DNA of 64,000 nt from Ostrea edulis (taxonomy: Eukaryota), in contig NC_079170.1 of assembly GCF_947568905.1 (NCBI RefSeq), positions 49,228,001-49,292,000 on the forward strand, in the 5' to 3' direction. Shown here in pieces: positions 8,807 through 64,000 of this stretch. Under the pieces are notes generated by a model, which saw only the letters and a list, made by a program, of their open reading frames with translations, made no database searches and had not been told where the DNA came from. The stretch's first letter is position 1. Every line of letters begins with the position of its first letter. A program made the translations under genes and the position numbers.

Positions 8807-10024
8807 GTCTGCTAAAGTGTCTTTCGACGACTGTGTTCCTGATACATTTAAGCACATCTCAGAAGCCCGGCCATACAACCTGTAAGTAAATTCTTAAGAG
8901 GTGAAGATTGATTCAGAGTTGAAACTAGCTACAAAACTGTAGCCCTGTGGAGAAGAATTGAAATAGACCGTCCAGATTTCACCGCCCAGAGAGCTACAGT
9001 TAAATGTGGGAAGAATCGTCATACTTCTGCTCAAAGTCTAATGTATCGACCCCCCCCCCCTTTTTTATAAGTATTATTTTTGAAATGATTGCAATAACGA
9101 TGATTCGCATGTATTACTTTGAAACTGAATTTTCTTAAAAGTCAATGATAGACTGACCAACGTGTCTTCCTAATCAGAAAAGCAGTGAGGTTTGTTAAGA
9201 TACTAACACTTTATAACGCGTAATTCTAGTGTCCAGAATAAGTACGTTGTTGATATAAGCCTGCACAGAAAAAAAAACCCCACCCTGACTATATCTAAAT
9301 ACATATATAACCGATTTAATATGATTTATTTGATATCGTAACATTGCACCACATTTTTAGATTACATAGTTTTAGGAAGTAGTATTTAAATTTTGTCATC
9401 TCTCTTTATATTTAGACGAGTTTGGAAAAGACTGCAGTGTAACAGCGGTAGAGCAGGACTTCGGATCGGTGGCGTCCGTCCTTTACAGCGGCTCGCCGGT
9501 CAACTCGTCGTGTGATGAAATGTCTTTTACTGGTTCTGGTCAGTATCTGCTGTGCTATAAACCAGAAAAATACATTGACCCCGATTGCGCTGTAGAACTT
9601 CACGTCTACGGCAAGAAGGATGGAAAAGCAGGAAAAGTACTGTTATACAGATTATATATTTGCCCCTCTTTCTCTCCTCCTCCTCCTTCTTCTTCTTTTT
9701 CTTCTTCTTCTTCTTCCCCCTATACAAATAATAATGATTAAAAAAAAATAAAAAATAAAAATAAATTCACACCTAACGTTTCATGATTAGATCATCTTTT
9801 AAAAGTATAGCACACACTTTTTAAAATTATTAATTTCCAGGTACTCATCGTCCTTTGTGAGGAGAAAGAAAGGCTATCAACGCTTTGCATCAAGTCCAAT
9901 GCCACACTACAATTAGAGTTCAAAACCCGTTATAGTAGGTCTCTAAACAGAGCTGCTTTCTCGGGTTATGTTTACACTAAAAATGCAACTGATGAATTTG
10001 GTAAGCAAGAATAATGTTTATACA

Positions 10025-10086
<62 letters not shown>

Positions 10087-10556
10087 TTATATTATTAAAA
10101 AGTCTCATTTGAAGTTTTAGACTAGTAAGAGCCCTTTTTAATCATTGCTTCAATATTTTTCTATTATGGATTTTTGTATACTAGGCACGACTGTTTTCTT
10201 TTTAAGCGTGTTAAATCAAGAATTTTGTGCACTCTTTGTTTCTTTCTATATTTGTTTTCGATAGGAGGTCACTAAATGCTATTTATTTTTCACTGTTTTA
10301 CATTCTCACAGACTGGCGGTTGTTTACCACGGTTATCGGGATCGTTGTGCCCGTCACTGTGTGTCTGGTTGCCGGAGTGGTTGCTGCTTGCTGCTTCTGT
10401 GCTTACAAACATCGAAAATTACGTGCATCGTCCGCATACAACCGGAACCCACCTCACGGAAGTTACCCGGTGCAGCCAACTCCAGCAGGAAATTATTCAA
10501 CCCCACCGCCTCCATATGATTCATCTTTTGGAACATACGATTATTCCAAAAAATAA
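8807..10556 (+). CDS. Paralogue A: CUB-like ectodomain, single TM, PPxY-tail membrane protein (start-codon exon not identified)
   Basis: Exons 8807-8881, 9416-9636, 9841-10000 and 10312-10556 are all AG/GT bounded, with phases 1,1,0,1, and join in frame. Translation: (G)LLKCLSTTVFLIHLSTSQKPGHTT-YEFGKDC...DPDCAVEL...TM(LFTTVIGIVVPVTVCLVAGVVAACCFC)...TPPPPYDSS. One unconfirmed candidate first exon is ATGGCGCCCCATG|GTACAT at 3765-3777 (correct phase, but about 5 kb away). Confidence 0.8.
10025..10083. repeat. Compound (GT)n(GA)n microsatellite in intron of paralogue A
   Basis: Directly visible dinucleotide tracts. Confidence 0.95.
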
Positions 10557-61130: not shown

Positions 61131-61635
61131 CAGTATTTTTGGACGCAAAAGGGGTTATTATGTTGGACTTTTTACCCAAGAGAAGTACAATAACTGGAGT
61201 GTACTATGCAAACTTGCTAGACCAGCTGAGAAGCACTATCCGTGAAAAATGCCGTGGTAAACTCTTTAAAGGTGTTTTGATGCAACAGTACAACGTGGAA
61301 GTCCACACTTGCAAAGTTGCAATTGATGCTGTAGAGCGAAACGGGTATGAATTAATACCACACCCTGCCTATTTGCCTGACCTAGCTCCTAACGACTTCC
61401 TGTTCAAAAACTTGAAAAAGGATATCCGTAAACGTCATTTCCGGTCTGACGAAGAGGTCGTGACGGCAGTTTAGGAGTGGGCCAATGGGAAGGACCCTGA
61501 CTTTTTCAGTTCAGAAATAAGTTAGGCTGGTAACTTATTGACTCGCCCTCATATCTATGTAATTACGTAAACTAATACTGTCATATCTAAAATTCTAAAT
61601 TGCAGATCTAGATTTGGTTGAAGAGACAGAAGACG

Positions 61636-64000
61636 ATGAAATTTTCAAGATGGGTAGAATATTCATTTATTGCAATTTCATATTTTGCGGAAGCATTTGG
61701 GGACACCGAAACATGTAAGTATTACGTAAGCAGTTTGTCAATGCACTTTGCGGTTGGTATTTTAGAAAACACGTTTCTTTACTTGTTAGAAAAATGAAAA
61801 AAAAATATGGATTGCAGCACAGAGAAAAATTCCAAACTTTAAATAGCGCTTATTTACTATGAAGAAAAATTGCATGTTACCTCATTATTCTTTGAAGAAA
61901 AATATTTAATAGCACTTTTTGAACCGACAGATCAGACGCACAATTTAGTGTTCAAAACATTTCAAATGGTTTAAAATAGATGTAACAGCACATGATTTCG
62001 AAAAAATGGCGTATTTTGAGACGACGTTTATGTATAATAAGGTAGGAAACAGAGTTTTTCATTTGTAGTACTTTCAATTTATGAATTCTTGCTACATGTC
62101 TACAGAAGAAAAAATCTTTTTGTGGCCTTGAACTCCACATTAAAATGCATCAACAACGTTGCATCTATTACCAATATTAATTTTCATGCACATGTTAATT
62201 CGATCCTCCTGGGCGCCTGACCCCACCTCTGGTGTGCCCAGGTGTCCGTGTTTGCCCAACTATCTACTTTGTATTGCTTGTTGGAGTTATGGGATTGATC
62301 GCTGTACGTTATCTTCACCTTTCATGTATAACCCAACTCGAAATAAAGTACACTGCAAAGTATTCCAGCTGTGCTTTATACATGTATTTGGATATTTTAT
62401 TGAACATTGACGGTAACGACAAATTACCAACTCAATTTTAAGACAGACAGGATGACGTCGATATTGCATTTATCTGGATACCAGTGAACATCCACATTCT
62501 CATTGCTGTTTTTCAAACGCAGAAGTGATTTCAAATAAGAGAGATTATTCTACATTTTGTCTAATTGATTGTTGAAGGAGTAAGTTCACATAGACACTTG
62601 ATCCCAGCTCTAGTGTGTCAAGGGTTCCGTGGTTGTCCTTCTCTTAATTATGTAGTCTTTGTGGAAATTGTGAGATTTATCACTGTTCGTTATCTTCACC
62701 TTTTCATGTGCAAAAAGCGCTGTAAGTCAAAAGCAGATTCTCAAATATTCTAAAGAACTTTTAGTAAAGAAATAACAAAGCCCTTAAAACATTAACAGTT
62801 GAGTATAAATCATATGACTTTTTAACGCCTTTCACCACATTTCCTCATGATCAATGAAATACTAGGCTTTTCGACATCATAGACAGCTTCCTCTTCAATA
62901 AAAATGGAAGTTAGAAATACTCATGATCTAGTCATCAAAAATATCTTCGTTACCATCACTCTGATTCTTCACACAAGAACAATGAAGTTGGTATCAAAGC
63001 GAAGATCGTTCACATCGTCTGTGAGCCATCTATCCTGATAAACGGAGTAATCCATAGTCAAAGTTGGCACGTAAAGAATGGCCTAACAGTTGGTGTAAAC
63101 ACGTCAAACATCATTCGACCTAGTACAGGTTGCACTTGTTACGGTCGTTAAAACGAAAGGCTAAATATCATATGCAGGTGTTAATGATATATTACTATAT
63201 CTATATGGGAAGGTGACGATGAAGAATCTAATCGTATCCCTTTTGTTATAAAGTTGTCAGTTTACCATTAAAGTCTGTATTCAGTAAAAGATCCAAATAT
63301 GAAATGATGTGGAAGACTCTGTATTGACATTTCTTTCGAGGTCACTGGGATGTATCGTATGAATAGATTAAGCGACATATGAATAAATGTTAATATTGTT
63401 ACTATTGTCAAGTTGAAGGCTTTAGCAAGATAATTTTCCTCTCATTTTCAAGCTTGTCAATAAATTGCGCCTCGTAAAACTATAAAAACAATGAATGTAA
63501 AATGTATATTAGATGACAAGGCTCGTATTGAAAATGTAGCAGTGGTGGAACATGGTATAATGCATATTCGTCCATAGCTCTGAACAGAAAAATTACTCTA
63601 GAAAATAGGATGTGTCAAATATCTACCCCACCTCCTGCTTGTTTATTGATTTCAAGCTATTAATATTTGTTTCAAATGTGGAGAATAAAGAGTATTGGTG
63701 ATTAAAGAAAGTATTCTAATTATAGATTATCATTATTGCGTACAACTGTCTTGTATAATTATTTTTCATGAATATTTTTAAGATGAATTTGGAGAAGACT
63801 GCTCAGTTGTGTTGAAAGCTGTTAATGAGGATCGTCAAATTTACGTTGAATACAACGGAAAGGAAGTTCTATCGCACTGTGCTGACTACTCATTTACAGG
63901 AAGAGATGACTCTTTTGATGAATATGAAGTCTGCGTTACACCTTTGGCATTTACAGATCCAAATTGCGCCATACAATTAAAGTATAAATCTTCATATTAC
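61636..64000 (+). CDS. Paralogue D: CUB-like membrane-protein family member, truncated by the window end
   Basis: Signal exon 61636-61714 (MKFSRWVEYSFIAISYFAEAFGDTET, then T|GTAAGT) joins in phase to the exon starting at 63783 (YEFGEDCSVVLKAVNEDRQIYVEYNGK...C...DEYEVCVTP...DPNCAIQLKY). Confidence 0.85.
62200..63480. mobile_element. Cluster of Penelope-like remnants in both orientations inside the intron of paralogue D
   Basis: Two copies of the terminal motif ...GATCCCA/GACCCCACCTCT...CGTTATCTTCACCTTT (about 62200-62325 and 62590-62705). Plus-strand RT fragments YLDILLNIDGNDKL, KSYDF...FPHD and FDIIDSFLFNKNG, plus a minus-strand RT fragment at about 63250-63480. Confidence 0.65.

What the first reader, a model, noticed from the sequence alone, without database searches (positions are those of the whole stretch)
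8807..64000. Tandem array of five unnamed CUB-like, single-pass, PY-motif membrane proteins: a candidate expanded receptor/ubiquitin-adaptor family
Seen: five same-strand paralogues that the ORF track fragments but that splice cleanly. They share a YEFGxDC...YxG...C...C...DP(D/N)CA ectodomain signature and conserved intron phases. The four whose C-termini fall in the window have one TM, a juxtamembrane Cys cluster and a Pro/Tyr/Gln tail. I recognise no named family with this combination. Established: type I membrane proteins with PPxY tails (PRRG, PMEPA1/LDLRAD4, Commissureless, WBP1/VOPP1) recruit NEDD4-family HECT ligases. Inference: this is a lineage-expanded, birth-and-death receptor or adaptor array. 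Its ectodomains are diversified and its signalling tail varies, as expected for innate-immune or cell-recognition genes, and it lies next to a C1qDC gene.
Basis: partly seen in the sequence, partly recalled or inferred. Interest (0 to 1): 0.8.

Follow-up and report, generated by a model that had tools for sequence, protein, structure and literature searches.

The report
Bivalve CUB-fold PY-tail membrane gene array
The window holds five tandem copies, one with a premature stop, of an unnamed bivalve-only family of small membrane proteins with a CUB-fold outer domain and a conserved PPxY tail motif of the kind that recruits NEDD4-type ubiquitin ligases; no function has been tested.

Summary
Five same-strand paralogues lie in this flat oyster (Ostrea edulis) window and share one exon plan with intron phases 1,0,1,1. 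Two of them reproduce NCBI proteins annotated only as "uncharacterized" (LOC125656135 and LOC125656133).

"CUB-like" holds at the level of fold. An AlphaFold model has pLDDT 90, and the 23 best VIA-align rows are all CUB domains (Z 10.7-7.3). The Pfam CUB model and a profile search of PDB sequences find nothing.

The family has about 130 representatives at 50% identity. Every named one I sampled is a bivalve, and no Pfam model or paper covers it. A C-terminal PPxYxxΦ motif (Φ = hydrophobic) occurs in 41 of 59 tails, against about 7 expected by shuffling.

- Copy B carries an in-frame TAA.
- Copy C, its intact twin, reads PPLSY instead of PPxY.
- The array runs on for about 130 kb past the window, with at least 10 members in all.
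- The ectodomains are under purifying selection (dN/dS about 0.16), so they are not visibly diversified.

The immune reading and the C1q neighbour carry no weight. The likeliest role is a PY-tail receptor or adaptor for NEDD4-type ligases, inferred from motifs only.

The scan holds unchecked first-reader notes of similar CUB-like/PPxY genes elsewhere in this genome.

The parts
8807..10556 (+). Gene A, a divergent paralogue. Exons 8807-8881, 9416-9636, 9841-10000, 10312-10556. The TM and tail lie in one exon, and the tail ends PPPPYDSSFGTYDYSKK. The start-codon exon was not found.
   Evidence: In the tree it is sister to Crassostrea virginica LOC111107497 (97/92).
19647..25673 (+). Gene B, a near-copy of C (95% aa). 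Exons 19647-19731, 22252-22487, 23428-23572, 24911-25054, 25474-25673. It has an in-frame TAA at 22449-22451 and a 6-nt deletion in the signal peptide. All splice sites are intact and it keeps PPPSY.
   Evidence: A DNA contig of run X3 covers 22387-22549 with 0 differences. No protein model for B appears in the database.
36561..42321 (+). Gene C = LOC125656135, 271 aa. Exons 36561-36651, 38191-38426, 40158-40302, 41590-41733, 42122-42321. The C-terminus reads PPLSYSDVTN, so the canonical PPxY is lost through CCA to CTA.
   Evidence: The spliced translation is identical to P0002. Genomic position.
48679..50560 (+). Gene E = LOC125656133, 278 aa. Exons 48679-48766, 49036-49271, 49614-49758, 49899-50042, 50337-50560. 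The C-terminus reads PPPNYVELDK.
   Evidence: A 278-aa gene is called at the matching place in L002.
63783..64000 (+). Gene F, start of exon 2 (YEFGEDC...DPNCA), cut by the window end. Its exon 1 was not found.
   Evidence: It is 98% identical to the fragment P0042.
17235..26849 (.). First half of a segmental duplication that carries gene B. It is 90-95% identical, in blocks, to 34697-43491.
   Evidence: self-blastn
34697..43491 (.). Second half of the segmental duplication, carrying gene C.
   Evidence: self-blastn. Between the B and C coding sequences dS is 0.095.
1024..2051 (+). Neighbouring C1q-domain gene. It is context only and not part of the family.
   Evidence: Pfam C1q, E 5.2e-14

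Best explanation
These are members of a bivalve-restricted, so far unnamed family of type I membrane proteins of about 250-300 aa. Each has a signal peptide, one divergent CUB-fold ectodomain with six conserved cysteines, one TM helix ending in a Cys cluster, a conserved basic juxtamembrane box (C-x-C-[RK]-[RK]-K-x-x-x-G-x-V) and a P/Y/Q-rich tail. The tail ends in an extended PY motif, (A/P)PPP-S-Y-[DS]-[ED]-[VLI].

The likeliest mechanism has three steps:
1. The CUB domain binds an extracellular or lumenal protein partner.
2. The PPxY recruits WW-domain HECT ligases of the NEDD4 family.
3. The overlapping YxxΦ (Φ = hydrophobic) can serve clathrin-adaptor sorting.
The protein, and whatever it holds in cis or as a ligand, would then be ubiquitinated, internalised and sorted. 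This is how Commissureless/PRRG4, Shisa/CYYR1/WBP1, LRAD3 and perhaps LRP10 are thought to work.

Shown here: the gene models, the fold, the taxonomic range, conservation of the motif, tandem expansion and purifying selection.

Inferred only: ligand binding, WW-domain binding, palmitoylation of the Cys cluster, and any physiological role.

In the window, the array is a product of repeated tandem duplication. The youngest event is the 9-10 kb duplication that gave B and C. One daughter (B) now carries a stop, and the other (C) has lost the core PY motif.
For: Gene models and annotation.

Splicing: spliced contigs from two RNA-like runs join exons at 19731|22252, 22485|23426, 23572|24911 and 25054|25474 with GT..AG. 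DNA runs show no such joints.

Fold: the AlphaFold2 model of the ectodomain has pLDDT 90.1 and pTM 0.85. Foldseek puts spermadhesin CUB domains first (E 2.4e-4). The VIA-align rows 1-23 are all CUB domains, with Z 10.7-7.3 and rmsd 2.6-3.8 Å over 100-112 residues. Two distant members are named 'CUB domain-containing protein' by UniRef.

Family: 133 representatives reach E<=1e-3 among 1.84 billion proteins. Most full-length representatives (180 aa or more) have a TM near residue 155-190. Named members come only from Ostrea, Saccostrea, Magallana/Crassostrea, Mytilus, Pinctada, Argopecten, Pecten, Mizuhopecten, Ylistrum and Mercenaria.

PY motif: 41 of 59 tails have PPxY against 6.7 expected from shuffles. 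A hydrophobic residue sits at Y+3 in 30 of 40. The TM plus tail gives sub-threshold Pfam hits to the PY-adaptor families CYYR1, RCR, WBP-1 and DAG1.

Precedents: PMC5578492 describes Comm's extended PY motif GLPSYDEAL, and also Rcr1-Rsp5, Shisa and CYYR1. PMC11315911 covers LRP10 (CUB + TM + PPxY) and LRAD3-Itch. PMC11399591 covers CYYR1-WWP1.

Selection: dN/dS is 0.19-0.21 between copies.
Against: - No experiment or expression profile is available, and no paper mentions any member.
- The Pfam CUB model and a profile search of PDB sequences find nothing, so CUB homology rests on a predicted structure.
- PPxY also binds non-ligase WW proteins (YAP, dystrophin, WWOX, MAGI), so the partner is open.
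- About 30% of the tails lack PPxY (some may be truncated models or isoforms), and so does the intact copy C in this window.
- The RNA-like runs are only guessed to be RNA and come from another coded organism label. Their contigs are 92-97% identical to B and are not B itself.
Confidence: 0.55

Rival explanations
1. Minimal endocytic cargo receptor. The CUB domain captures a soluble ligand, as the Ca-dependent CUBs of cubilin or the LRP3/10/12 class do. The YxxΦ/PPxY tail exists mainly to drive the receptor's own internalisation and recycling, and does not regulate other membrane proteins.
For: The fold matches ligand-binding CUBs of cubilin, neuropilin, Kremen and TSG-6. Y+3 is hydrophobic in 30 of 40 motifs, which gives a YxxΦ signal. 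LRP10 traffics between the TGN, plasma membrane and endosomes (PMC11315911).
Against: No ligand is known. The Ca-binding residues of the CUB could not be checked because no model coordinates or residue alignment were available. This reading overlaps the main explanation and differs only in what gets sorted.
Confidence: 0.25
2. A diversifying innate-immune or self/non-self recognition receptor family.
For: The genes are tandemly expanded, with genus-specific clades and one copy bearing a stop. A C1q gene lies nearby.
Against: Ectodomain dN/dS is 0.16-0.17, no higher than the tail. There is no signalling domain or ITAM/ITIM-like module beyond PPxY. C1q genes are numerous in this genome, so adjacency is uninformative. 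No expression data exist.
Confidence: 0.1
3. The tail docks non-ligase WW proteins, such as YAP/Yorkie, dystrophin-type, MAGI or WWOX proteins. The family would then be a membrane anchor or signalling scaffold and not a ubiquitin adaptor.
For: PPxY is the generic ligand of group I WW domains. A weak Pfam hit covers the dystroglycan C-terminal region.
Against: Short single-pass proteins whose PY motif sits close to the C-terminus are, in the characterised cases, NEDD4-family partners (PMC5578492, PMC11399591). The hits are sub-threshold and compositional.
Confidence: 0.1

Closest known systems
LRP3 / LRP10 / LRP12 class (CUB + LDLa type I receptors with a proline-rich, PPxY-bearing tail)
   Same: Type I topology, a CUB ectodomain, a single TM and a proline-rich tail with PPxY (PMC11315911). 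The structure search also finds arthropod and mollusc CUB/LDLa clusters of about 290 aa at TM 0.67-0.70.
   Different: There is no LDLa repeat and only one CUB. The protein is 250-300 aa, against more than 700. The CUB is too divergent for Pfam PF00431. No sequence homology was detected.
Commissureless / PRRG4 and the Shisa-like STMC6 adaptors (Shisa, CYYR1, WBP1/VOPP1), and yeast Rcr1/2
   Same: These are short single-pass proteins with Cys residues in or next to the TM and PY motifs that bind NEDD4/Rsp5-type ligases. Comm's critical motif LPSYDEAL closely resembles PPPSYDEV here (PMC5578492). The TM plus tail gives sub-threshold Pfam hits to CYYR1, RCR and WBP-1.
   Different: Their ectodomains are tiny, Gla-type or Cys-knot-like, not a 125-aa CUB jelly roll. 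All Pfam scores fall below the curated cut-offs, so this is an analogy of architecture and not membership.
Canonical CUB domain (Pfam PF00431; spermadhesins, neuropilin a1/a2, Kremen, C1r/C1s/MASP)
   Same: The predicted fold superposes at Z 7.3-10.7 over 100-112 residues. The spacing C37-C63 (26 residues) and the motif 'YCG' recall the CUB C1-C2 loop and the C4 'CG'.
   Different: There is no HMM match at any threshold tried. The family has six conserved Cys where CUB has four. The Ca-site residues were not assessed.
ENaC beta/gamma C-terminal PY motif (PPPxYxxL), the Nedd4-2 target mutated in Liddle syndrome
   Same: The extended motif PPPxY-x-x-hydrophobic is the same. For example, two family members read PPPSYDSL and PPPSYDAL.
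   Different: It sits in an unrelated protein (a channel subunit), so only the linear motif is shared.

Membership tests
CUB domain (Pfam PF00431 / CUB clan) | Significant match to the CUB profile HMM | tested here: not met
   CUB does not appear among the Pfam hits for P0002, for its ectodomain, for the exon pieces or for distant members at E<=10, nor among the 25 most-matched families listed for the 66 members at E<=1. A profile search of PDB sequences finds no CUB chain.
CUB domain (Pfam PF00431 / CUB clan) | Jelly-roll beta sandwich of about 110 residues that superposes on solved CUB domains | tested here: met
   The model has pLDDT 90.1. VIA-align rows 1-23 are all CUB domains, Z 10.7-7.3, and stand above the unrelated rows. 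Foldseek puts spermadhesins first.
CUB domain (Pfam PF00431 / CUB clan) | Two conserved disulfides (C1-C2, C3-C4) and, in the Ca-binding subset, the Tyr/Glu/Asp/Asp site | not testable with these tools
   Six Cys are conserved (C37, C63, C82, C93, C113, C122), but model coordinates and residue-level structural alignments were not available.
Shisa-like / CYYR1 / WBP1 (STMC6) PY adaptors | Pfam match above the curated cut-off, with the C*C*CC*CC Cys-rich ectodomain | tested here: not met
   CYYR1 gives a best E of 4.3e-5 and appears in 12 of 66 members. The one CYYR1 hit listed in detail scores 15.7 bits against a cut-off of 31 and lies on the TM plus tail. WBP-1 scores 13.7 bits against 28.1. 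The ectodomain has a CUB fold, not a Shisa fold.
PY-motif membrane adaptors of NEDD4-family ligases (functional class) | Cytosolic PPxY/LPxY conserved beyond chance | tested here: met
   41 of 59 tails have it, against 6.7 expected. The motif is PPxYxxΦ in 30 of 40. In the window it is present in A, B and E and absent in C.
PY-motif membrane adaptors of NEDD4-family ligases (functional class) | Physical binding to WW domains of a HECT ligase | not testable with these tools
   This needs a pull-down, yeast two-hybrid or co-immunoprecipitation experiment.
LRP3/10/12 class | LDL-receptor class A repeats interspersed with CUB domains | tested here: not met
   Ldl_recept_a does not appear for any member scanned in detail, nor among the 25 families listed for the 66-member scan.

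The most novel reading that the evidence does not exclude
A bivalve-specific, tandemly expanding family of miniature CUB receptors acts as a programmable set of NEDD4-ligase adaptors. Each paralogue would use its CUB domain to pick a different surface or secreted partner for ubiquitin-dependent down-regulation. This would be a lineage-specific system for tuning surface receptors. Loss of the PY motif in copy C and a stop in copy B would be ongoing functional turnover.
Probability: 0.2. Interest if true: 0.65.

Novelty: new variant of a known kind. Interest (0 to 1): 0.42.

Why it matters
If the mechanism holds, bivalves have built their own family of PY-tail trafficking adaptors on a CUB ectodomain. 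That combination is otherwise known only in the large LRP3/10/12 receptors.

The family has no Pfam model, no name and no literature, yet it is conserved across the oysters, mussels, pearl oysters, scallops and the one clam (Mercenaria) sampled here. A family definition would therefore put a name on many 'uncharacterized' genes.

The array also offers a natural series for testing what the PY motif does: PY-positive copies (A, E), a PY-lost copy (C) and a copy with a stop (B).

It is not a surprise at the level of principle, since all its parts are known.

Tried and rejected
- Pfam on single exons and on the whole protein gave nothing meaningful. The YHS, TM_ErbB1 and SCIMP hits are sub-threshold noise.
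- A single-sequence AlphaFold run failed (pLDDT 46). Only the run on the alignment worked.
- The profile search of PDB sequences gave only one chance hit, at E 3.1.
- Two long multi-repeat hits of the HMM search (a 1515-aa horn shark Ig protein and a 1224-aa ENA protein) were checked. I set them aside as probable false positives on repetitive proteins: each matches in 7-8 short partial stretches, and their Pfam tables show Ig domains in one and only scattered sub-stretch noise in the other. I therefore do not claim the family outside bivalves.
- The search for the ATG exon of gene A and for exon 1 of gene F used ORF, hydrophobicity and donor-phase heuristics and found no convincing candidate. 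The candidate at 56557-56629 is weak.
- Two literature searches by 12 locus and accession ids gave zero papers.
- Gene A could not be sent to the word-indexed protein search. No stop-free reference spans enough of it to pass the length filter, and I did not type spliced sequences. For the same reason A, B and F were compared only inside scripts.
- I had first placed the stop in B at 22452-22454. The correct position is 22449-22451.
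Full report
**What is in the sequence.** The window is low in GC (33-39%) and eukaryotic.

I spliced the most compact copy (E) by hand from the DNA. It has five exons with GT..AG borders and phases 1,0,1,1, and gives 278 aa. The word-indexed protein search then returned P0002, 'uncharacterized protein LOC125656135 [Ostrea edulis]'. 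My five-exon model of copy C translates to exactly that protein. Copy E corresponds to LOC125656133 (P0004).

A look-up of gene C places the window at OX387710.1:49,228,001-49,292,000. Copy A has the same plan, but its TM and tail exons are fused and its ATG exon was not found. Copy F is cut by the window end.

Copies B and C lie in a segmental duplication, 17235-26849 against 34697-43491, that is 90-95% identical in blocks. Their coding sequences differ by dS 0.095 with dN/dS 0.19. B has intact splice sites but a 6-nt deletion in the signal peptide and a single nonsense change, TAA at 22449-22451 where C has TTA. A DNA contig of run X3 covers 22387-22549 without a difference, so the stop is in the reads, although that run may be the assembly's own sample. 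No protein model for B exists in the database. Conversely, the intact copy C has CTA for CCA in the last exon, which turns PPPSY into PPLSY. Within this young pair, one copy has a stop and the other lacks the canonical motif.

**Splicing.** Two runs guessed to be RNA (X1, X2; a different coded organism label from the DNA holders) contain contigs that join the exons precisely. One 608-nt contig lies on 19641-19731, 22252-22485 and 23426-23572 and then jumps to 24911. X2 also jumps from 25054 to 25474. The reported joints (23572 to 24911 and 25054 to 25474) have GT..AG ends, and the reconstructed exon borders at the other two junctions are GT..AG as well. The DNA runs X3 and X6 instead cover the introns. 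These contigs are 92-97% identical to B, carry T at 22450 and contain the six bases that B lacks. They therefore come from a close paralogue or orthologue and not from B. They support the exon plan and the expression of a close relative, not expression of B.

**Fold of the ectodomain.** Pfam finds nothing on the exons, the full protein or the ectodomain, and a family profile finds no PDB sequence. A single-sequence AlphaFold run was useless (pLDDT 46). With a 19-sequence ectodomain alignment (A2) the model reached pLDDT 90.1 and pTM 0.85 and is all-beta.

Foldseek ranks the spermadhesin CUB domains first (E 2.4e-4, TM 0.65-0.67 by target). The independent VIA-align scan of 48,161 chains gives only CUB domains in rows 1-23: spermadhesin, neuropilin, Kremen, TSG-6, cubilin, enteropeptidase, PCPE-1, MASP, C1s and Neto2. 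These have Z 10.7-7.3 and rmsd 2.6-3.8 Å over 100-112 residues, ahead of unrelated jelly rolls at Z 7.2 or below. The atlas search finds a mollusc 'hypothetical' cluster at TM 0.77 and CUB/LDLa clusters at 0.67-0.70. UniRef names two distant family members 'CUB domain-containing protein', although Pfam's CUB model does not hit them either.

I conclude that this is a CUB-fold domain too divergent for the standard HMM, with six conserved cysteines where CUB has four. Disulfide pairing and the Ca2+ site could not be examined.

**Family and range.** The word search found 19 proteins, all Ostreidae and all 'uncharacterized'. A profile HMM of the ectodomain against 1.84 billion representatives gave 133 hits at E<=1e-3 and 65 at E<=1e-10. 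Most of the full-length ones are 200-300 aa with a TM at about 155-190.

I sampled 30 representatives for names. Every named one, apart from the shark protein set aside below, is a bivalve: Ostrea, Magallana/Crassostrea, Mytilus, Pinctada, Argopecten, Pecten, Mizuhopecten, Ylistrum and Mercenaria, with Saccostrea among the hits. The rest are unnamed contigs of about 1-1.5 kb. Two long repetitive proteins (one from a shark, one unnamed) match in many short partial stretches and look like false positives. No paper in the library mentions any of 12 locus or accession ids.

**The tail.** Across 66 aligned full-length members, the inner end of the TM and the following box (C-x-C-[RK]-[RK]-K-x-x-x-G-x-V) are conserved. 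PPxY occurs in 41 of 59 tails of at least 25 residues, against 6.7 expected from 1000 shuffles of each tail. It usually sits 5-20 residues from the C-terminus. The sequences are related, so this measures conservation and is not an independent probability.

The last PPxY is followed by V, L, I, F or M at Y+3 in 30 of 40 cases. The consensus is (A/P)PPP-S-Y-[DS]-[ED]-[VLI], that is, PPxY overlapping YxxΦ.

The TM plus tail gives sub-threshold Pfam hits to CYYR1 (12 members, best E 4.3e-5), RCR, WBP-1 and dystroglycan. All of these are PY-bearing single-pass proteins, so the hits show a resemblance of architecture and not membership.

The literature precedents are explicit:
- Comm's critical motif is GLPSYDEAL, Rcr1 binds Rsp5 through PY motifs, and CYYR1 has Cys residues in its TM and three PPxY motifs (PMC5578492).
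- CYYR1 acts on WWP1 (PMC11399591).
- LRP10 is a CUB-bearing type I protein with a proline-rich, PPxY-containing tail, and LRAD3 activates Itch through PPxY (PMC11315911).

**Evolution.** dN/dS between C and E is 0.21 (dS 1.1, near saturation). The ectodomain, at 0.16, is lower than the TM plus tail at 0.25. B-C gives 0.17 and 0.18. This is purifying selection without any gross excess of change in the ectodomain. Pairwise means cannot exclude a few selected sites.

A maximum-likelihood tree supports these groupings:
- A with C. virginica LOC111107497 (97/92), so A belongs to an old subfamily.
- B with C (100/100).
- An O. edulis-only clade of four (100/98).
- A Saccostrea-only clade of four (99/94).
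The backbone is unresolved. Rows left out of the tree are F (too short) and most of the unnamed representatives.

Genome look-ups show that the array continues downstream on the same strand. A 272-aa gene ends at 49,318,298. It is followed by LOC130046519, LOC125656142, LOC125656130 and LOC130046380, the last reaching 49,420,147, with a further member near 49.66 Mb. The window therefore holds the first half of an array of at least 10 genes over about 185 kb. Genus-specific duplication plus a copy with a stop fits birth-and-death evolution in a modest sense.

**Interpretation.** The architecture is shown. The most economical mechanism is a small CUB receptor or adaptor whose tail recruits NEDD4-family ligases and clathrin adaptors, so that it, its cargo or a cis partner is ubiquitinated and sorted. 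I put this at about 0.55. A pure cargo-receptor version follows at about 0.25, and the immune-diversification and non-ligase WW-partner readings at about 0.1 each. None of the binding steps was or could be tested here.

The C1q neighbour adds nothing. C1q genes are numerous in this genome's notes, and from general knowledge they are numerous in bivalves as a whole.

**Relation to earlier notes.** The scan holds unchecked first-reader notes of other CUB-like/PPxY genes and clusters elsewhere in this genome. I did not test them. They suggest that the architecture is common in this oyster, which would lower the surprise but not change the findings.

**Verdict.** The family is real and already annotated as 'uncharacterized'. 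It is conserved across bivalves and unnamed. It is a new variant of known kinds (CUB ectodomain plus PY-tail adaptor), of moderate interest.

Noticed in passing
window 17722-18498 and 35187-35403: A 33-bp tandem array lies about 1.2 kb upstream of exon 1 of genes B and C. It has 23.6 copies in the B half of the duplication and 6.6 copies in the C half.
   Followed up: no
window 58469-61474: A Mos1/mariner-type transposase (HTH_48 at 58469-58714, DDE part at 61139-61471) is split by an inserted element with a reverse-transcriptase ORF at 59460-60553. It lies between genes E and F.
   Followed up: partly
window 51631-52704 (- strand): Tc1-like transposase remnants lie just downstream of gene E: a paired-box-type HTH ORF and a DDE_3 fragment.
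   Followed up: partly
window 21115-21766 and 23645-23974: Repeat arrays with a period of about 165 bp sit inside introns 1 and 3 of gene B. They have enormous summed contig depth in the DNA runs, so they belong to a very high-copy genomic repeat.
   Followed up: no
window 1024-2051: A two-exon C1q-domain gene on the + strand. It has a signal peptide and heptad-like exon at 1024-1248 and a C1q domain in the ORF 1527-2051, which also gives weak PA14/GLEYA hits.
   Followed up: partly
window 4023-4561 vs 41012-41559: Inverted copies of a repeat with a unit of about 140-146 bp occur upstream of gene A's region and inside intron 3 of gene C, at 86% identity.
   Followed up: no
L003 1-862 (OX387710.1, ending 49,318,298): A called 272-aa gene on the same strand lies between the window end and LOC130046519. 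It may be the full gene F or another family member. Its sequence was not examined.
   Followed up: no
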